Assembly: GCF_006345805.1 (NCBI RefSeq)
Contig: NC_043010.1
Coordinates: 47,864,001-47,928,000 of the forward strand
Reading direction: 5' to 3'
DNA length: 64,000 bases
DNA from: Octopus sinensis
Taxonomy: Eukaryota
The notes beneath the pieces are model-generated. The model saw nothing but the letters and a program-made list of their open reading frames with translations, ran no database searches and was not told the origin of the DNA. The translations under genes and the position numbers were made by a program. Shown here piece after piece: positions 351-54,529 of this stretch (positions are counted from its first letter, which is position 1; each line of letters starts with the position of its first letter).

Positions 351-1192
351 AGGTCATTAAAAATGTAATGTCCGATTTTCTTATGCACCAAGTTTGACAG
401 TCATTAACTGTTTTATCCCGACAATTCTTTGTTTTACAACATTGAAGAGTTACATCACTTTTCGAAATGCAATTCATGGTGTCATCTTGAAACTTGCTTT
501 TCTTTGCTCTCATGGCGTAAAAGCAAAGCATTTTTGTATTGTATTGTTACGTGTAATGAAAACTAGCAACAATAGCAAGGATTCTGCATGGTGGTTGGAT
601 AGAGACGAAGTGCCAAAACACAATCCAAAAAAGAATATTCACCAATAAAAGCTAATGGTGTCTGTTTCGTGGTCCAGTGCTGGTGTCATCCACAACAGCT
701 TCATGAAACCTGGTAAGTCAATTACAGCAGATATATACATCAACCAATTGGGTGATATAATGAGTAAACTTGCAATTAAACAACTGAGATTAGTCAAGAG
801 ACAGGCCTACTCTCTTGCAAGACAATGCTTGACCACATGGTGCACAAAGAACGCTACTCAAGTTACAGGAGCTGAACTTGGAAGTACTTTGTCATCTACC
901 AATTTCACCAGACTTTGCACCAACTGACTATCATGTTTTCCAAGCATTAGACAACTTTTTGCAAGGAAAAAAAAGTTCAAATCTGAAGAAGATGCAAAAA
1001 CAGCCTTTCCTGAGTTCATCACCTCTTGCTTGCCAGAATTCTTCGCTGCTGGCATAAATAGGCATAAATAAGCTACTGATAAAATGGCAAAATTGTGTTG
1101 ATAATTTCGGTGCATACTTTCATTAACTGCAATGCTTTTTGTTGAGATAAAGTAAAATAAGGTTTCAATTCAAAATCAGACATTTGACCTGA
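349..1192 (+). mobile_element. Internally deleted, dead Tc1/mariner element
   Basis: Frameshifted mariner transposase C-terminal half (KLMVSVSWSSAGVIH...KPGKSITAD; PDFAPTDYH-like region; KWQNCVDNFGAYF). Degenerate TIR tcaggtca...aatgtccgatttt / aaaatcagacatttgacctga in TA-rich flanks. Confidence 0.85.
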
Positions 1193-4075: not shown

Positions 4076-4490
4076 ATTATTTACATTTGACAAGATTTGT
4101 CATCTTGCTTGTTAACACAACGTTTCAGCTGATATACCCTCCAGCCTTTATCAGGTGTCTTGGGGAAATTTCAAACTTGGGTTCTCATTCCTAAGGTATT
4201 TTTCAATATTATTATTAGGTCACTACTTGGAATCAAACTCGGAATCTTAGGGTTAGTAGCCGCACTCTTAACCACTACACCATATGCCCATGGACAATTA
4301 TGGGAGTGAACTTTAGGGCTTATAAATCTAATAATTTCCTATCCTTCCTTAATACCGGTTCCCATATGTTATTCAATCTGCACTCGGTCTGCTTAGGAGT
4401 TTGTTGTGTCCAAGCATATGTGCTGCTTCTTTTAGTTTTCATATTTTCCAGTGGTGTTCTCTGTCTATTATTTTAACTGCATCCACAGGG
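4076..4490 (-). mobile_element. 5'-truncated Penelope-like element end: GIY-YIG C-terminus + tRNA-like segment + hammerhead-bearing terminus
   Basis: Minus frame DAVKIIDREHHWKI*KLKEAAHMLGHNKLLSRPS resembles a PLE GIY-YIG C-terminus. It is followed by a tRNA-like head (4289-4217), (AAT)n and a hammerhead motif (4159-4114). Confidence 0.7.
4114..4159 (-). ncRNA. Minimal type I hammerhead ribozyme motif (core variant CUGAUAA)
   Basis: gacac-CTGATAA-a-ggctg/cagct-GAAAC-GT-T-gtgtt. Stem I gacac/gtgtt; palindromic AACGTT stem III. Confidence 0.55.
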
Positions 4491-4697
4491 GATTCCAAGC
4501 AGTGACCTGAATAATAATAATGATAATATCGAAAAATACCTTAGGAATGAGAACCCAAGTTTGAAATTTCTCCAAGACACCTGATGAAGGCTGGAGGGTA
4601 TATCAGCCGAAATGTTGTGTTAACAACAAACAAGATGAGGACAAATATCAGTCAAATGTAAATAATGCACATAATTCCTCATCTCTTAAATATAGAA
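4491..4697 (+). repeat. Inverted copy of the Penelope terminal repeat (pLTR-like)
   Basis: 4491-4666 is the reverse complement of about 4076-4234, with a few substitutions and indels. Confidence 0.85.
4576..4621 (+). ncRNA. Minimal type I hammerhead ribozyme motif
   Basis: gacac-CTGATGA-a-ggctg(gagggtatat)cagcc-GAAAT-GT-T-gtgtt. Stems I and II pair. Confidence 0.65.
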
Positions 4698-23224: not shown

Positions 23225-25870
23225 ATAAGTCCGGCAGGATGTCAATAGACAGCTTACCGAACTACATCCAGGCAATGCAACCTCATATCGCTAATACAAA
23301 AGTAACAACTGTACAGGCGCATGAGTAGAGAGAAAAGGTCCTCAATGCCCACATGATGATGTGGACAATTGTTCTGGGACCTCAGAAACGTACTGCAAAG
23401 AATTTCCAAGCCTGGAACAATGATATCCCGGCACTGTATGGACTTCGCAAGGACCATAAAGGTTTTACTGACCCTATAGCAGGACCACCAACAAGACCAG
23501 TCTGTGGGCGAATATCGCTAGCAATTGCAGAATCTCCTACTTCCTCTCAATGATCATACGCCCTATAATCAGGATGTCACCTGATGTTGTGTGACAGCAC
23601 AGAAGATCTCCTAAGCAGGATCAGTGACTGTAACAAAACTTGTGACTTGACAGGATGTACAGTAGGTAGCATGGATGTGGTATCCCTATACCCATCGATT
23701 GACGTAGATTTTGCAGTGGAGAAGTGCGTGGAGATTGATCAACGAGCCAGTGGAGTTCTGTAATGTCGACACAGAAGAACTGGGCCTCCTACTTAGACTG
23801 ACATATAAGTGAATACTTAGATAAACATAATCTTAGTAGTTTCTGCCCCAGTAGATGTTTAAGAGGTAGACCGCCTACAATTACTTCTATGGCTAGGAAG
23901 ACACATATAGAAAGATGGCACGGATGGACCAGAGCCATACGGAGCCCCGCAAATGTCCATCAGGTAAAGAAAATGATCGCACATGCACTAGGAGCTAGTA
24001 TAAGAGTTACCCTAAAAGGCCACACATTTAAATTTAATAATAAAATATATGCCCAGGACGAGGGGGCAGCCATCGGGTTAGTATCGCTGGTGATGTGGCC
24101 AACCTCTTCATGGTATGGTGGGACAGAAGCTTAAAGAATGCCTACTGCAGAAATCCATACTCGTAAACATGTACTCTCGCTATGTTGATGATATCATATA
24201 GTAGTAAAGGCACCCCCACAAGAGAGTACTGTTGATATAGTAATAGAAACTAATACTATGGAGAGCATCCAGCAAATAGCTAACTCCATCCACCAGAGTA
24301 TAAGGTCACAATAGACTACCCCACTAAACACCCCAACCATAGACTACCAGTACTAGACACTGAACTCTGGCTAGAAATTGTGAAAAATAAAACCCAAATC
24401 CTTCATTCATACTATGCAAAACCTATGGCCTCAAATACCTGATCCACCGGAACTCAGCCATTGCGGGCAATGCCAAATTCAATATTTTGATGGCAGACCT
24501 CGTCAGAATAATGAGAAATGTGTCACGCATGTGCGAGCCTACAGAATAAAAAGACACATACATACTTCATTCACCGCATGCAGTTCTCAGGTTACAGCCA
24601 TAAAGAAAGGATCAGAGTATACAAAGGGCCATGAAGAAATTTGATAATATATTATGTAATGATAGGAATGGGATTTGCCCACTATAGGAACAAGTCATGG
24701 AACATATAGAAAGGACAAAAAAGAAAATAGGAAGGCCAACTCTTGGTATGATAGCCATAAATACCAGAGTGTCATGTTCGTTGACACCACCCCTGGAGGT
24801 GAACTAGCGTACCGCTTTAGAAGGACCTAGATAAACTTAAACTAAGAATTAAGGTTGTTGAAAAGCCAGGCAACCCTATCAGATCTATAATTGGTAGAAG
24901 CTATCCTTTTAGTAGAACTCTCTGTACGGATAACTATTGCACTGTATGTAGATTTAGCCCACAACGAACTGTAAAGCCAGAAATGTGGTCTATAGTATAA
25001 GATGTATAGAGGGACGATGCAGTAACAAGACAGTAACATACGTAGGGGAAACTGCAAGAAGCATTGGTGAGCGGGTGAATGAACATTGGAGACAACTCAA
25101 GGAAGGTAAAAGCTCATCGATTCTGTACCAACACGCCGAACAAGAACACGGGGGATCAATCAATAACATAGATTAAGATATTGTCCACACATAGAACAGA
25201 TGCAACAATTAGACAAATTACAGAAGCTACACATATAATAGAAAATAAACCTAGCCTGAATAGAAAACTAGAATGGAGCAATAGCGCACACCACAACATA
25301 TGACAATAGTGGATCCTGCAAACATAATAAATACACAGGTAATTAAAGAAATAGAATGAATATCTATATATGTATATGTGTATATATATGTATATGTATA
25401 TGTGTATATATGTGTGTGTATATGTATATATATATATATGTATAGTATGTGTGTGTATATCTATATATGTATATGTATATTCCTTTTTTTTTTTTTTTTT
25501 CCATTAGATTTATTATTATTATTACTAATATTGTTGTTATACCATACATACAAGCATATGTAATGATAATAATGGGTGGATGTAAACACATGAACAAAAT
25601 TAGAACAAAAGCAACAACAACAAAAACAAAATACAAATTACAAGAATGTATATAACCAGAAGATACAAATATTACAGGCATCCCCCCCCACACACACTAA
25701 ATAAACATAGACGCACATAGAGATATAAACATGCGCAAATGAAGACATACAATAGAAATATAAAATGGCTGACGGTGTAAAGGAGAGACCCAAGTAAGTG
25801 AGAAAAAACAAGGACCACTGATGCGGTCACAGGAGTGTGACGAAAGAACTTTGGCCGAAATAAGATTAAG
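23225..25870 (+). mobile_element. Neptune-like Penelope element (RT + GIY-YIG), frameshifted
   Basis: LYGLRKDHK, VGSMDVVSLYPSID, QDEGAAIG, YVDD (24181-24192), Cys-rich linker, VYSIRC...YVGETARSIGERVNEH. 3' region interrupted by a microsatellite. Confidence 0.85.
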
Positions 25871-43210: not shown

Positions 43211-43327
43211 ATGGACCCTGAAACTAAAAGCGCGCAAACAGCTACTGCCGGTGACCCTGCAAACACTATATTCGGCAAAATATTACGTGGTGAAATTAAA
43301 AGTGACTTCATCTACGAAGATGACAAG
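43211..43327 (+). CDS. HINT1: Histidine triad nucleotide-binding protein, exon 1
   Basis: MDPETKSAQTATAGDPANTIFGKILRGEIKSDFIYEDDK, donor AAG|gtttgt; homologous to the HINT1 N-terminus (TIFGKII..EI....IFEDD). Confidence 0.95.
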
Positions 43328-47620: not shown

Positions 47621-47725
47621 TGTGTTGCATTTCATGACGTCAACAAGCAAGCTCCTGTCCATATTTTGATCATACCCAAGACACCCATTTCCCAAATATC
47701 AACAGCAAGTGATGAACATAAAGAA
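47621..47725 (+). CDS. HINT1: Histidine triad nucleotide-binding protein, exon 2
   Basis: aacag|CVAFHDVNKQAPVHILIIPKTPISQISTASDEHKE|gtaagt. Confidence 0.95.
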
Positions 47726-47744
47726 GTAAGTGAATTTATTCTTT

Positions 47745-47910
47745 TACTTGTTTCAGTCATTTGATTGCAGCCATGCTGGAGCACCACCTTAAAGAGTTTT
47801 AGTCACAGAAATTGACCCTAAGACTTATTCTATTAGTCTTGTTTGCTGAACCACTAGGTTGTGGAAACATAAACACGAGCATCAATTGTCAAGCAATGGC
47901 AGGGACACAC
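47745..47910 (-). mobile_element. SINE family A, 3' half (inverted relative to the 48955 copy)
   Basis: ttacttgtttcagtcatttgattgcagccatgctggagcacc... Confidence 0.8.
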
Positions 47911-48104
47911 ACACAATATATGATGATGATGATGATGATATATATATATATATATATATTTTTAAATTAGAGAAGAACCACCATGTAGCAATTCAACAAT
48001 GATTAAATCAAAATATATAGAAAAATTTTTTATATATGATAAAACATATACCTATAAGTAAGTAAAGTACAAAATAATAAATATATAGTATATAATTAGT
48101 AAAA

Positions 48105-48187
48105 AGACTACACGTGTTTCATGGCTATATTTTCAAACTGATAACAGTAAAATCAATTCAATTTAAATATAGTCACTCATCAGGTCC
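48105..48187 (-). ncRNA. Minimal type I hammerhead ribozyme with intact core
   Basis: ggac-CTGATGA-gtgactatattt...aaatatagccat-GAAAC-ACGT-GTA-gtct. Stem I 4 bp, stem II about 11/12 bp, palindromic ACACGTGT stem III, GUA cleavage triplet. Confidence 0.75.
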
Positions 48188-48954
48188 AAGATAAAAAAAA
48201 AGTAAAATAATTAAATAAATAAATATACGTATATTATCTCGTAAGAAAATATAAATATATATATAAATACATAATATTTTAATAAAAATTGAACAAAATT
48301 CAATAATATATCTTAAAATAAAAAGACAAAATATCTTAAATATATTCTGTTAAGTAAATCCTTAAACTTACTACATAGGACTTATTGTTTATAAAATTTA
48401 TCTCGTTAAAAAGCGTGGTGTAAATAAAACTAGAATAAATAGATATAAATATTTATTTTATCTATGAAAATAAATTTTAGCTTATAGAAGAAAAAAAATA
48501 ACAAACTATAATATATCATTACTAGAAAATTCAAATACAAGTAATTAAAACAAAATAAATAAATATATATATATATATATAAAATACATAATATACATTA
48601 AGGAGTGGTGGGGAGGGGTAGTGCTAGGAATATGGCTTAGGTACCAAGGGGGTGGCAGCCTGAAAATATTTGGGAACCACTGATGTAATCTGTTAGATAT
48701 TCATGTAGGAGCACACACATGACCAGAGTTATTAGGCTACTGAGAAAATTAGAAGTTGGAACAAACACAGCTGTTCCAAGTTGTGTTCAGCATCCTACTT
48801 ATAGCGCAGCATCAGTAATATATTACTAGCTCTTTTGATAATAACCCACCTGAAACCACCCTTGGTTCTATGACACAAGTTCTGTTTTAACCCATTAGCA
48901 TTCAGTTTAACCATGGTGCCACGTAAAAAGCACTGGTGCTGGTGCCGCATGAGA

Positions 48955-49463
<509 letters not shown>

Positions 49464-49588
49464 CTAAATTTCCAACTTCATTCCAGGATGTAAACTCCTG
49501 CAGTATTTCAAGGTGCATAATAATAATAATGTTGTAAATGTCTCTTAAGACAGTGTCTCATTTAAAGTTTTGCTGTAATCTATAAAGA

Positions 49589-49594
49589 AATAAA
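49589..49594 (+). terminator. Candidate HINT1 polyadenylation signal AATAAA
   Basis: First AATAAA 125 nt after the stop. Confidence 0.5.
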
Positions 49595-49901
49595 GTATCA
49601 TCCTGGTGCATGAAATAATTCAATTTATTTCATTTCCATATGTTCTGTCTTCTGTTTTTATCTAATTTTATAAGAGGAAATACATGTAGTGGCAATAATT
49701 TGCTGAATTGGTGATCAGAATTAAATATATGAAATAAGTTATCATTTTAACACCCATGGGTTGAATGAAATTTGAGGCAGGTTTTCTACAGCTGGTTGTC
49801 ACTGGAAATAAATAACACTGCTTGTGTTCTTTTGTCCAGTACAGTTAAATTCTCTAAGAAATGGAAAAAAAAGAAAATTACAATACTTAGATCTACATTA
49901 T

Positions 49902-50232
49902 AGGTGCAGGAGTGGCTGTGTGGTATGTAGTTTGCTTACCAACCACATGGTTCTGGGTTCAGTCCCACTGCATGGCACCTTGGGCAAGTGTCTTCTACTA
50001 TAGCCTTGGGCCAACCAAAGCCTTGTGAGTGGATTTGGTAGATGGAAACTGAAATAAGCCTGTCGTATATGTATGTGTGTGTGTCTGTGTTTGTCTCCCA
50101 ACATTGCTTGACAACCGATGCTGGTATGTTTATGTCCCTGTAACTTAGCGGTTCAGCAAAAGAGACCGATAGAATAAGTACTAGGCTTACAAAGATTAAG
50201 TCCTGGGGTCGATTTGCTCGACTAAAGGTGGT
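49902..50232 (+). mobile_element. tRNA-derived SINE, family A
   Basis: Well-preserved copy between the HINT1 and ACADSB 3' ends. Confidence 0.85.
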
Positions 50233-50690
50233 GCCTCAACAAATTCTGTTTGACCCATGAAAGAATAGAAAAGTAGGTGCTAAAATGATAAAGTTCATCA
50301 TACAACTACACAAATGCACACAATAAATGAGTCAAGAAGTATCTAATGTTAGAGTAAATTTTATTTATTTTACAGGGCTGACCGTTCTTGTGGTAATAGA
50401 AAAAAATATATATATTCAAGAATAACAAATGTACACAACTTTATGTTCCTATCAGCTGAAATTAAGAAATTCTAATTTATATTGCATTGATTTAATTTGA
50501 TTCATCACAGGTCTAGTTTTTTTGTAGGAATTGATTGCAGTATATTATTAAATTGCTTCAAAGACTCGGAGGAGGAGAGATGGAAGTTAACATTGATTTC
50601 AGCTGGAATTGAGTTCAATACATTAAATAATAATTAAATATCTTAGTCTTAACATTTTGCAGTTTCTTCCACCTAACCTGTAAATATACT

Positions 50691-50696
50691 TTTATT
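50691..50696 (-). terminator. Candidate ACADSB polyadenylation signal (one of several)
   Basis: AATAAA on minus; alternatives at 50903-50908 and 50360-50369. Confidence 0.3.
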
Positions 50697-51068
50697 AAAC
50701 ATAAGTGCATTTTTTGGGTTTGATCTGGCATGTTACTGCTACTCAGAAGGCTGCAAGGTCTGAACTCAGAACACTTAGGAACAAAACTATGAGGTTCAGT
50801 GCTCTACAATATGTAACAGTGAACAAGTAGCAACCACTGAAGAAACACCATTGCTAGTCTCATAATTTAACGAACTGGTTGATTTCTCACTTCCACAAGA
50901 GATTTATTTTTTGATATGTGTGGATTAGAATAGATTGTTGTTTTTTTCAATGGTTAGAACCCATTTTTGTTTTATCGTTGTAGACATAGTTTCTAAATTA
51001 AAAACAAGTGGTGTAACTCAAGTGAGAGAAAATAGTGGATTCAAAAACTGCAGTTTCTTGTACGGTTC

Positions 51069-51145
51069 TTACATTTGGTATTCAGTTGCAAGGCATTTGG
51101 CTATAGTGTTCAGTTGAATATTTGACGTTCCTTCATAAATAGTAC
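51069..51145 (-). CDS. ACADSB: Short/branched-chain acyl-CoA dehydrogenase, terminal exon (human exon 11 equivalent)
   Basis: ctacag|(G)TIYEGTSNIQLNTIAKCLATEYQM*; catalytic Glu in IYEG is present. Confidence 0.95.
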
Positions 51146-53077: not shown

Positions 53078-54022
53078 TATGTGTCCTTCACTTTTTTTAG
53101 ATGAAGTGTGGTTTGAAGGAGAGTTGGCTGCTATTTCTAGCGTGTCTTTCTGAATGACTTGTCACAAATACTTACCTGTACTGTCGAATAAGTGAAACAT
53201 TATTTTAAGTTATATGAAGTGTTGTTGACCAACATCTGAACAAAGTGTATTAGATAAAGTGAGATAAATTATGATAGAGTTACACATATATACAATCATA
53301 CTTACTTACAGCATAGATAGTAACAACACAAAACAACCTCAATGCATGACTAAATATAACAAAATCTAATTATTTTTTCTCTAAGCACACATCTATACAT
53401 ATCTTTATCTTTCTCCTTAAATTCAATCCCCAGTTGTTGTCTAACCCCAGGTCAACCTTGACTGATAACACCTTTAATTAAAAGCATTTCAGGTCAAACC
53501 GCCCTATCTTAGTTTCAAACAGTGCATCAAGACTATTAAACAGACTGAATCCTTCACTTTTTAAAATGGTGGAATGCGGCTTGAGGGGAATTTGGCTGCT
53601 ATTTCTAGCAAGTTGAAAGACTACATACAAACTCCCTCTTGTGTGCTCTAGTCCAGGTTAAATCATGTGAGTCGTAACACATCAACAAGCAGGTATTTTA
53701 TTTATAGATACTTAAACATCTAAAATAGGTCTGATGGTTAAATTGTTAGGGCATAACTAATCATGTGACCAAATAGACTATTAAATGTTGTTACACATCA
53801 CTGGTCAAAATGTGCCTTGCATGGCTTTTAACCTTTGAATAATGCTACTCCACTGGCTAGGTGAGCAGGCCAACATTCCCTGCTGATCTAAAGGAGGACT
53901 ATAGCAATGTGAAATGAAGTGTTTTGCTCAAGAACACAATGCACCACCCAGTCTGGGAATCAAACCCATGATATAGCAATCGTGAGTACAACAGCCTAAC
54001 CACTTTCACATATGAGGACATA

Positions 54023-54529
54023 CCGTAAATCCTCGAGCATAGTCCGCCCTTGAGTATAATACACAGGGGATTTTTAAGGGGCGGTACCTCTGAAAAACCT
54101 AAACCTTGTGTATAATACGTACCCCTTCTCTAACTTGAGTCAAGGAGGTCTATATAACATTCTTGGTTTGTAAAAATGTAAATGGTTACATCCTTTATTA
54201 TTATTGTATATATAACATAATGCAAACGTGTAGCTTTTGTGTGCATTTTGTTTACAGATAATAAAGAAATAACAGTAATAACGTTTAGTAAATGTTGCTT
54301 ACTGCAAGTTATGGATGATTCTTTTATGACTTCATTGCTTTCAGGTTTAGCTTAAGGTATTTTTGCGCCCGACATCACAAAATGCATCTGAATAAACATT
54401 GCCAGACAGCAAATCAAGACTCAGACACTGCTTAGAAAATATTTTTCATTTTTAATATATAGTACACACTAGGGATTTTGACCTTTAAATTTTGGGGAAA
54501 AAATGCAAATTATACTCGAGGATTTATGG
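54023..54529. mobile_element. pogo/Tc1-like MITE (TA TSD)
   Basis: TA|ccgtaaatcctcgagcata ... tatactcgaggatttatgg|TA. Confidence 0.85.

What the first reader, a model, noticed from the sequence alone, without database searches (positions are those of the whole stretch)
48105..48187. Intact-core hammerhead antisense to HINT1 and downstream of ACADSB: a possible self-cleaving barrier between convergent genes
Seen: canonical CUGAUGA, GAAAC and GUA, all three stems, and the palindromic ACACGTGT stem III typical of dimer-active minimal hammerheads. Predicted cut is between 48109 and 48108 on the minus strand. It is harmless to HINT1 pre-mRNA but in sense to ACADSB read-through, about 3 kb past its stop. 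Established: ribozyme cleavage downstream of a poly(A) site can promote Pol II termination, and minimal PLE hammerheads cleave mainly as dimers. Inference: a Penelope-derived ribozyme might be co-opted to limit antisense read-through into HINT1.
Basis: partly seen in the sequence, partly recalled or inferred. Interest (0 to 1): 0.75.

Follow-up and report, generated by a model that had tools for sequence, protein, structure and literature searches.

The report
Repeat-derived hammerhead motif in octopus HINT1 intron
The hammerhead ribozyme motif is really there, but it is one stray copy of a repeat family that carries such ribozymes around octopus genomes, and nothing indicates it was recruited to stop transcription between HINT1 and ACADSB.

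Summary
On the minus strand, 48187..48105 reads GGAC-CUGAUGA-[56-nt hairpin]-GAAA-CACGUG-UA|GUCU: a full type-I hammerhead core with a three-helix junction, cut predicted at 48109|48108. It is not a chance motif. Related copies occur on other Octopus vulgaris chromosomes (L008, an inverted pair; L010). They keep the core boxes while helix III changes from ACACGUGU to ACGUACGU or ACAUAUGU, always a perfect 8-nt palindrome. The window is Octopus sinensis. The site lies in HINT1 intron 2, antisense to HINT1, and 2,882 nt past the ACADSB stop, in sense to ACADSB.

The barrier idea is not supported. The ~845-bp segment holding the motif is missing from O. bimaculoides, and no copy is found in the Argonauta hians locus. 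Both keep the convergent HINT1/ACADSB arrangement. The O. vulgaris copy is identical, but so are its flanks (0.6% intron divergence). The site sits 2.3 kb inside HINT1, not between the genes. It is a lone copy with a 4-bp helix I, a G·U at 10.1-11.1 and a helix III that needs a partner. Best reading: a passenger copy of a retrozyme- or Penelope-type hammerhead repeat. This is a new member of a known kind, of low interest.

The parts
48184..48187 (-). Helix I, 5' strand (GGAC)
   Evidence: Pairs with GUCU at 48108-48105: C-G, A-U, G-C, G.U. There is no pairing beyond 4 bp. Predicted pair probability is about 7%.
48177..48183 (-). Hammerhead core box CUGAUGA (C3-A9)
   Evidence: Exact match. The related copies keep it as CUGAAGA, where only the free position 7 differs.
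48121..48176 (-). Helix II: long AU-rich imperfect hairpin (3+8+10 bp, 9-nt loop). G10.1.U11.1 wobble and A.C mismatch at 10.4/11.4.
   Evidence: The MFE fold forms it with pair probabilities above 0.96. The proximal part (UGACUAUA...UAUNGCCAU) is conserved in L008. The distal part differs in sequence and length but still forms a hairpin.
48117..48120 (-). Core box GAAA (G12 A13 A14 A15.1)
   Evidence: Exact match, and conserved in all related copies.
48110..48117 (-). Helix III: 8-nt palindrome ACACGUGU (A15.1...U16.1). As a monomer it is 2 bp plus an ACGU loop; in a dimer it is 8 bp.
   Evidence: L008 has ACGUACGU and L010 has ACAUAUGU at the same place. All are perfect palindromes reached through changes on both sides. 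The dimer duplex is -12.3 kcal/mol, whereas monomer pair probability is about 0.1%.
48108..48109 (-). Predicted self-cleavage site: after A17 (48109), before G1.1 (48108)
   Evidence: This follows from hammerhead numbering applied to the sequence. Cleavage itself was not tested.
48105..48108 (-). Helix I, 3' strand (GUCU)
   Evidence: It is followed by UUUUACUAAUUAUAUA, a flank shared with the L008 copies.
47961..48804 (.). Lineage-specific segment that contains the motif. Present in O. sinensis and O. vulgaris, replaced by 128 unrelated bases in O. bimaculoides.
   Evidence: blastn of intron 2 against L004 leaves window 47960-48804 unmatched, with conserved flanks on both sides. O. vulgaris is 96% identical over it.
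47938..47965 (.). (AT)n microsatellite bordering the lineage-specific segment. A second AT-rich tract lies at 48553-48590.
   Evidence: O. bimaculoides diverges from the window right after its own (AT)n tract. PLE-type elements favour microsatellite targets. This link is inferred, not shown.
47621..49463 (+). HINT1 exon 2 (47621-47725), intron 2 (47726-49298) and exon 3 (49299-49463). The motif lies in intron 2 on the opposite strand.
   Evidence: tblastn and splice sites. The spliced product is 100% identical to the Octopus vulgaris/sinensis HINT1-like protein P0001.
51069..51145 (-). Last coding exon of ACADSB, stop codon at 51071-51069. Convergent with HINT1.
   Evidence: Translation ends ...GTIYEGTSNIQLNTIAKCLATEYQM*. 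The C-terminal 100 aa match human ACADSB 2JIF best, E 3e-45. An Acyl-CoA_dh gene is annotated there in L001-L004.

Best explanation
The element is a solo copy of an AT-rich dispersed repeat of octopus genomes that carries a type-I hammerhead ribozyme. This is the kind found in animal non-LTR retrozymes and Penelope-like-element repeats. The copy entered HINT1 intron 2, next to an (AT)n microsatellite, in the O. vulgaris/O. sinensis lineage after the split from O. bimaculoides.

In the repeat's own life cycle the ribozyme would cut multimeric or read-through element RNA. It would do so most efficiently when two copies pair through their palindromic helix III to form an 8-bp intermolecular stem.

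At this locus the copy is a passenger. Its orientation relative to HINT1 and ACADSB is accidental. As a lone copy with a 4-bp helix I and a G.U at 10.1-11.1, it would cleave any minus-strand RNA weakly, if at all.

Shown: the motif, family membership, compensatory helix III changes, lineage restriction and gene geometry. Inferred: the retrozyme/PLE life cycle, the microsatellite target, and weak activity at this site.
For: 1. The motif is complete at the stated coordinates.

2. It has relatives elsewhere.
- Window 48085-48286 aligns to an inverted pair in L008 on another O. vulgaris chromosome (blastn E 1e-6 and 2e-5; sequence). Mean column identity over the hammerhead is 82%.
- A covariance model built from these copies picks up a third locus, L010 18262-18152. 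That copy has CUGAAGA, G.U at 10.1-11.1, GAAAC, the palindrome ACAUAUGU, A17 and a 3+7-bp helix I.

3. Helix III covaries. ACACGUGU, ACGUACGU and ACAUAUGU are all perfect 8-nt palindromes, and pairs 15.3-16.3 and 15.4-16.4 are changed on both sides. The innermost pair can form only between two molecules. Neither L008 nor L010 was found by requiring a palindrome, so the chance of both inner 4-mers being palindromic is about (1/16)^2.

4. Octopus DNA is rich in such motifs. A descriptor for core plus palindromic helix III gives 9 hits in 467 kb, against 1.15 in shuffles. One further family (ACAGCUGU; L010 +16504, L012 -25631) is among them.

5. The architecture matches published descriptions of metazoan type-I and PLE hammerheads: short helix III capped by a palindromic loop, low GC, short helix I, long helix II, and inverted pairs.

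6. The segment is lineage-specific and abuts an (AT)n tract.
Against: - Only three independent loci of the family were recovered, because no octopus genome could be searched directly. Copy number, a consensus, tandem organisation and an autonomous partner are therefore unknown.
- No PLE ORF lies near any copy.
- The L010 match is weak by model score alone (19 bits, E about 5).
- No Rfam hammerhead model matches. This negative is uninformative, because the models also miss the clear PLE-type min-hammerhead at 4576-4621 and both L010 hammerheads.
- The O. bimaculoides site is not a clean empty site, so insertion versus deletion or replacement is inferred rather than proven.
- Activity was not measured for any copy.
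Confidence: 0.78

Rival explanations
1. Co-opted barrier. ACADSB read-through transcripts are self-cleaved at 48109|48108. The cut gives exonucleases an entry point, Pol II terminates, and antisense transcription into HINT1 is limited.
For: - The geometry is right. The motif is in sense to ACADSB and 2,882 nt past its stop.
- Candidate ACADSB poly(A) hexamers lie at 50908-50369.
- Efficient engineered hammerheads placed downstream of a poly(A) site do cleave co-transcriptionally, and the Pol II-associated RNA is degraded before termination (West et al. 2008, PMC2288634).
- The core is intact.
Against: - The motif is absent from O. bimaculoides and from the Argonauta locus, although both have the same convergent gene pair.
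- It is no better conserved than its flanks between O. sinensis and O. vulgaris.
- It lies about 2.3 kb inside the annotated HINT1 transcript, beyond exon 3 and the whole 3' UTR. Read-through would already have crossed the part of HINT1 most exposed to it.
- Membership of a repeat family explains its presence without any function.
- It is a single copy with an unstable helix I and helix III, so slow cleavage is expected. Single PLE-type motifs showed no detectable cleavage in vitro.
- Hammerhead cleavage leaves a 5'-OH end. From my own knowledge, this is a poor substrate for the 5'-3' exonuclease.
Confidence: 0.04
2. Chance motif. An AT-rich intron happens to spell the hammerhead boxes with fortuitous pairings.
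For: - A relaxed hammerhead descriptor hits 11.6% of shuffled windows, and 70% of chance hits have a long helix II span like this one.
- Helix II is made of TA-rich sequence that pairs easily.
- The fold z-score is only -1.5.
- There is no Rfam match.
Against: - Homologous copies at two other loci keep every core position at 63-71% overall identity, and they change helix III only in compensatory ways.
- Motifs with core plus palindrome are about 8-fold enriched over shuffles in octopus DNA.
Confidence: 0.05
3. Locally active element. The copy is itself transcribed, from its own promoter or as part of a longer element, and yields processed or circular retrozyme RNA from this locus.
For: - Animal retrozymes with type-I hammerheads are expressed as small linear and circular RNAs.
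- In L008, a copy of the sequence downstream of the hammerhead begins 2 nt from the predicted cut site. This hints that the family's ribozyme has cut in vivo.
Against: - Releasing a unit-length RNA needs two ribozymes in tandem. The window has one copy and no tandem repeat.
- Helix I is degenerate compared with the L010 copy.
- No expression data could be consulted.
Confidence: 0.08

Closest known systems
Type-I hammerheads of animal non-LTR retrozymes (Cervera & de la Pena 2020, PMC7229834; bioRxiv 10.64898/2026.07.22.740005)
   Same: - Type-I topology (helix I open).
- Helix III of 2 bp capped by a palindromic tetraloop.
- Low GC (23-27%).
- Dispersed solo copies exist, including in introns.
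- Molluscs are known hosts.
   Different: - No tandem array at this locus or in L008, which holds an inverted pair.
- Helix II is 21 bp plus a loop instead of about 4 bp.
- Helix I is 4 bp instead of about 6.
- No recognisable loop 1 / loop 2 contacts.
- G.U instead of G-C at 10.1-11.1.
Minimal hammerheads of Penelope-like elements (Cervera & de la Pena 2014, PMC4209133)
   Same: - Short helix I (4-5 bp) and longer than usual helix II.
- Palindromic 15.2-16.2 and loop 3.
- Occurrence as inverted pairs and as many solo copies.
- Low activity expected for single motifs.
   Different: [quoted passage not shown]
- No G10.1-C11.1 pair.
- Not inside a recognisable pLTR and no PLE ORF nearby.
- The window's own PLE-type min-hammerhead (4576-4621) and the motif of its young PLE family (about 25825-25870) look quite different.
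Newt/axolotl satellite-2 hammerheads that cleave as dimers
   Same: A weak helix III with a palindromic loop, so that two copies form an extended intermolecular helix III.
   Different: Those sit in long tandem arrays, which supply the partner in cis, and they have conserved loop-loop contacts. Here there is a single copy.
Engineered hammerheads and CoTC elements used to study Pol II termination (West, Proudfoot & Dye 2008, PMC2288634)
   Same: A self-cleaving element placed downstream of a poly(A) site, in sense to the transcript.
   Different: Those ribozymes are fast, optimised monomers placed just beyond the poly(A) site. This one is a weak-looking solo copy more than 2 kb away, inside the neighbouring gene, and it is not conserved.
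Conserved intronic hammerheads of amniotes (HH9/HH10; de la Pena & Garcia-Robles 2010, cited; details from my own knowledge)
   Same: A hammerhead located in an intron of a protein-coding gene.
   Different: Those are in sense to the host gene and ultraconserved across species. This one is antisense and lineage-specific.

Membership tests
Hammerhead ribozyme, type I | Invariant core: C3 U4 G5 A6 N7 G8 A9, G12 A13 A14, A15.1-U16.1 pair, H17 not G | tested here: met
   CUGAUGA at 48183-48177, GAAA at 48120-48117, U16.1 at 48110, A17 at 48109.
Hammerhead ribozyme, type I | Three helices around the core, with helix I open and helices II and III closed | tested here: met
   Helix I is 4 bp (one G.U). 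Helix II is 21 bp and imperfect. Helix III is 2 bp plus an ACGU loop, or 8 bp in a dimer. Helix I and monomeric helix III are thermodynamically weak: the HH fold is -12.5 kcal/mol against an MFE of -16.9 kcal/mol.
Hammerhead ribozyme, type I | G10.1-C11.1 base pair | tested here: not met
   G.U in the candidate and in L010; U.U in L008. G10.1 itself is kept in the candidate.
Hammerhead ribozyme, type I | Match to curated covariance models (Rfam hammerhead families) | tested here: inconclusive
   No hit at the gathering score or at E<=10. The same models also miss the PLE-type min-hammerhead at 4576-4621 and both L010 hammerheads.
Hammerhead ribozyme, type I | Tertiary contacts between helix I and loop 2 | tested here: inconclusive
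   No internal loop in helix I and no canonical loop 2 could be recognised in the candidate. The L010 copy has a UU/U internal loop in helix I.
Hammerhead ribozyme, type I | Site-specific self-cleavage giving 2',3'-cyclic phosphate and 5'-OH ends | not testable with these tools
   Needs in vitro transcription or end mapping.
PLE minimal hammerhead (Cervera & de la Pena 2014) | Located in the flanking repeat (pLTR) of a Penelope-like element | tested here: not met
   There is no RT or GIY-YIG coding remnant in intron 2 or within several kb of the L008, L010 or L012 copies. The nearest PLE in the window is at about 23329-25300 and carries another motif.
PLE minimal hammerhead (Cervera & de la Pena 2014) | [quoted passage not shown] | tested here: not met
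   Helix II starts directly after A9. The min-hammerheads at window 4576-4621 and L007 28754 do have this nucleotide.
PLE minimal hammerhead (Cervera & de la Pena 2014) | Palindromic 15.2-16.2 and loop 3 | tested here: met
   ACACGUGU. The relatives have ACGUACGU and ACAUAUGU.
PLE minimal hammerhead (Cervera & de la Pena 2014) | Belongs to a consensus family within the genome that shows covariation | tested here: met
   Three independent loci. There are two-sided changes at two helix III pairs and a U-A to U.G change in helix II. The sample is small.
Animal non-LTR retrozyme | Short tandem repeats (about 150-450 bp), each unit with a type-I hammerhead | tested here: not met
   Single copy in the window and no tandem structure. 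L008 holds a head-to-head inverted pair. Solo monomers are known for retrozymes.
Animal non-LTR retrozyme | Low GC content (<45-50%) | tested here: met
   GC is 0.23-0.27 over the hammerhead copies and 0.31 for window 48001-50000.
Animal non-LTR retrozyme | Expressed as small linear and circular RNAs | not testable with these tools
   No transcriptome data were available.
Functional ribozyme terminator / read-through barrier | Retained across species that share the gene arrangement, with conservation above the flanks | tested here: not met
   Absent from O. bimaculoides and from the Argonauta locus. Between O. sinensis and O. vulgaris the flanks are as identical as the motif.
Functional ribozyme terminator / read-through barrier | Transcribed in sense, and cleaved co-transcriptionally | not testable with these tools
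   Only the orientation and the distance (2,882 nt past the stop) could be checked.

The most novel reading that the evidence does not exclude
The lineage-specific hammerhead copy is catalytically competent in vivo and cuts ACADSB read-through RNA inside HINT1 intron 2. A recent repeat insertion would then have changed how two convergent genes interfere with each other in O. vulgaris/O. sinensis compared with O. bimaculoides. This would be a natural case of a transposon-borne ribozyme acting as a Pol II read-through trap.
Probability: 0.04. Interest if true: 0.65.

Novelty: new member of a known kind. Interest (0 to 1): 0.25.

Why it matters
The result shows that octopus genomes, like those of many other animals, are seeded with repeat-borne type-I hammerheads. 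At least three kinds were seen in about 0.5 Mb. One family has an unusually long helix II, a non-canonical 10.1-11.1 pair and a strictly palindromic 8-nt helix III. I found no paper describing hammerheads in cephalopods, so these copies could seed a proper family description.

For gene regulation the result is negative. An intact-looking ribozyme core next to a gene is not evidence of co-option when it belongs to a repeat family and is missing from sister species.

Tried and rejected
- Rfam at the gathering score and at E<=10 gave no hammerhead hit for the candidate. I rejected this as evidence, because the same models miss the clear min-hammerhead at 4576-4621 and the L010 hammerheads.
- The MFE fold and z-score of the 93-nt region (z = -1.5) are not informative for a hammerhead.
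- A search for other copies of the 846-bp segment in the window and the orthologous loci found none.
- An exact-pattern scan of metagenome contigs for the conserved 3' box gave 0 hits.
- nhmmer with a three-copy profile over 521 kb found nothing beyond L008 and the orthologues.
- I looked for a Penelope ORF next to the hammerhead copies. tblastn with 48 octopus PLE fragments found none. The idea that the candidate derives from the young PLE family present in the window was dropped, because that family's 3' motif is unrelated.
- Permissive alignment of the AT-rich flanks of the window and L008 copies aligned everything to everything at about 60%, so the element boundaries could not be set.
I used motif greps instead.
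- The octopus genome itself could not be searched as DNA with the tools at hand. I sampled about 0.35 Mb of O. vulgaris by fetching loci around PLE-derived gene models.

Full report
**Observation**

The minus strand of 48187..48105 reads GGAC CUGAUGA GUGACUAUAUUUAAAUUGAAUUGAUUUUACUGUUAUCAGUUUGAAAAUAUAGCCAU GAAA CACGUG U A | GUCU. Every invariant hammerhead position is present, and the topology is type I (helix I open).

- Helix I has 4 pairs, one of them G.U.
- Positions 10.1-11.1 form G.U rather than G-C.
- There is an A.C mismatch at 10.4/11.4.
- Helix II is a 21-bp AU-rich imperfect hairpin with a 9-nt loop.
- Helix III as a monomer is 2 bp plus an ACGU loop.

In the nearest-neighbour model the hammerhead fold costs -12.5 kcal/mol against an MFE of -16.9. 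Helix II is stable (pair probability above 0.96). Helix I reaches about 7% and monomeric helix III about 0.1%. Two copies pairing through the palindrome gain -12.3 kcal/mol.

**Context**

The window is Octopus sinensis chromosome CM016872.1, 100% identical to L002. HINT1 lies on the plus strand, with coding exons at 43211-43327, 47621-47725 and 49299-49463. Its spliced product is identical to the annotated Octopus protein P0001. The motif therefore sits in intron 2, antisense to HINT1.

The convergent gene is ACADSB. Its C-terminal 100 residues match human ACADSB (2JIF) best, at E 3e-45. Its stop codon is at 51071-51069 on the minus strand, so the motif starts 2,882 nt downstream in sense.

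The O. vulgaris annotation ends the HINT1 transcript at the equivalent of window 50527. The motif is therefore about 2.3 kb inside the HINT1 transcription unit, beyond its 3' UTR and exon 3. It is not between the genes.

**Chance**

A descriptor fitted to the candidate finds one site in the window. It finds 0.01 per dinucleotide shuffle and 0.015 per block-wise shuffle. A relaxed hammerhead descriptor finds 0.135 per shuffled window, and 70% of those chance hits have a long helix II span like this one. Taken alone, such a motif would occur by chance some hundreds of times in a genome of about 2.7 Gb (genome size from my own knowledge).

Rfam gives no hammerhead match at the gathering score or at E<=10. 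This negative proved uninformative, because the same models also miss a clear PLE-type minimal hammerhead in the window and two further octopus hammerheads.

**What decided the matter: related copies**

No octopus genome could be searched as DNA. I therefore sampled O. vulgaris by fetching loci around gene models derived from a Penelope-like element whose degraded copy lies in the window.

*L008.* In L008, on another chromosome, window 48085-48286 aligns to two places in opposite orientation (E 1e-6 and 2e-5). They form a head-to-head inverted pair. Each arm reads ...AAC CUGAAGA UUGACUAUAA...UUAUGGCCAU GAAA CGUACG U A | GUGG UUUUACUUAUUAUAU. Over the hammerhead the mean column identity to the candidate is 82%. 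The 3' flank UUUUACUNAUUAUAU is shared, and the AT-rich sequence further out is not reliably alignable.

*L010.* A covariance model of these copies recovers a third locus, L010 18262-18152. The score is low (19 bits, E about 5). However, this copy has features the model did not ask for:
- the palindrome ACAUAUGU;
- G.U at 10.1-11.1, as in the candidate;
- a helix I of 3 + 7 bp interrupted by a UU/U internal loop;
- a 5' strand AUAUCCUUGG that resembles the candidate's UUAUCUUGG.

*Covariation.* Across the three independent loci the core boxes are unchanged except at the free position 7. Helix III reads ACACGUGU, ACGUACGU or ACAUAUGU, always a perfect 8-nt palindrome, reached through changes on both sides of pairs 15.3-16.3 and 15.4-16.4. 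The innermost pair cannot form within one molecule. This is the signature of hammerheads that extend helix III between two copies, as described for metazoan type-I and PLE hammerheads. Helix II also shows a U-A to U.G change, and its distal part is replaced by a different hairpin.

*Enrichment.* A descriptor that asks only for the core and a palindromic helix III gives 9 hits in 467 kb of octopus DNA, against 1.15 in shuffles. These include a second family with ACAGCUGU and a short helix II (L010 +16504, L012 -25631).

The candidate is thus a member of a population of repeat-borne hammerheads, not a chance motif.

**Conservation at the locus**

O. vulgaris is identical over the 181 nt around the motif. 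The two species differ at only 9 of 1,570 aligned intron positions, and by 1.6% over the locus. An 83-nt element without a change is therefore expected.

In O. bimaculoides the flanks of intron 2 align, but window 47961-48804 is replaced by 128 unrelated bases. The break comes directly after an (AT)n tract. The Argonauta hians intron does not align at all.

Neither locus contains any hammerhead-like motif by either descriptor or by the covariance model. Both species nevertheless keep HINT1 and ACADSB convergent and close together. O. vulgaris and O. bimaculoides diverged 13-34 My ago.

**Mechanism**

Most likely the copy is a passenger. The ribozyme serves the repeat's own propagation: processing of multimeric or read-through element RNA, aided by dimerisation through helix III. 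Published work supports this class of role, and also reports low or undetectable cleavage by single PLE-type motifs.

One observation hints that the family's ribozyme has cut in vivo. In L008, a third copy of the 300 nt that follow the hammerhead is joined to unrelated sequence 2 nt from the predicted cut site. This is a single case in a rearranged region and may be coincidence.

A link to Penelope-like elements is plausible but not shown. In its favour are the inverted pairs, the microsatellite borders and the minimal architecture. Against it, no PLE ORF lies near any copy, and the young PLE family present in the window and in all fetched loci carries a different conserved 3' motif.

**The barrier hypothesis**

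Its factual premises hold: the orientation, the distance, and the fact that engineered hammerheads downstream of a poly(A) site cleave co-transcriptionally before termination. Everything that could be tested speaks against co-option:
- The motif is restricted to one lineage.
- It shows no excess conservation.
- It lies inside HINT1 rather than between the genes.
- It is a single copy without a dimer partner.
- Helices I and III are weak.
- Membership of a repeat family is a sufficient explanation for its presence.

Transcription and cleavage could not be tested. I put this hypothesis at about 4%.

**Verdict**

This is a real hammerhead motif of repeat origin: a new member of a known kind, in a phylum branch where I found no published description. 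The regulatory interpretation is unsupported. Interest is low to moderate.

Noticed in passing
window 4576-4621 (+) and 4076-4234 (-): A textbook PLE-type minimal hammerhead: GACAC CUGAUGA A GGCUGG-AGGGUAUA-UCAGCC GAAA UGUU|GUGUU. It has the bulged A after position 9, G10.1-C11.1 and a 6-bp GC-rich helix II. It lies in a 176-nt segment that is repeated in inverted orientation 260 nt away (85% identity). The inverted copy has the core change G8>A and keeps CG at 15.2/16.2, so the ancestral form was GAAACGUU.
   Followed up: partly
window ~23329-25300 (+), 3' motif at ~25825-25870: A degraded canonical Penelope-like element: RT motifs DVVSLYPSID, QDEGAAIG and YVDDII, followed by a C-terminal GIY-YIG domain, with frameshifts. 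Young copies (97-99% identical at protein level) occur in every fetched O. vulgaris locus. All of them carry a conserved 3' motif GGACCA CUGAUGC GGUCACAGGAGUGUGAC GAAAGAACUUUGGCC, often as inverted pairs. It looks like a hammerhead with C in place of A9.
   Followed up: partly
L010 16464-16583 (+) and L012 25671-25552 (-): A second octopus hammerhead family with a short helix II: GUCU CUGAUGA (A/U)GGGAUAU...AUAUCCC(A/U) GAAACAGCUGUA|AGAC. The two loci share flanks. Positions 10.1/11.1 are A.A in one copy and U.U in the other.
   Followed up: partly
L008 49898-54329: A complex rearranged region around the hammerhead pair. A 300-nt direct repeat (50320-50619 = 53203-53502, 100% identical) starts 2 nt 3' of the predicted cleavage site. 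There is also a 424-nt perfect inverted repeat (49898-50321 / 53906-54329). This could be hammerhead-processed element ends, a recent rearrangement or an assembly artefact.
   Followed up: partly
L007 28754-28728 (-): Another minimal hammerhead of the GAAACGUU type: GUUU CUGACGA A GAGC-UCC-GCUC GAAACGUU|AAAC.
   Followed up: no
window 47739-47898 (+), inverted at 49142-49234 and 50102-50185; many copies in L001-L004: A SINE-like repeat flanks the lineage-specific segment and recurs several times per 25 kb in all Octopus loci. HINT1 intron 2 is highly dynamic: O. bimaculoides has an extra ~1.45-kb insertion at L004 17032-18482.
   Followed up: no
window 361-1054 (+): Remnant of a mariner-type transposase reading frame (...DYHVFQALDNFLQGKK...), broken by stop codons.
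   Followed up: no
window 49463-51069: The HINT1 and ACADSB stop codons are only 1.6 kb apart. The O. vulgaris annotation gives HINT1 a ~1.06-kb 3' UTR ending about 540 nt from the ACADSB stop, and ACADSB poly(A) hexamers lie at 50908-50369. The two 3' UTRs therefore probably overlap in antisense.
   Followed up: partly
L003 361-433 (+): A tRNA gene (39 bits) about 9.6 kb upstream of HINT1 in Argonauta hians.
   Followed up: no
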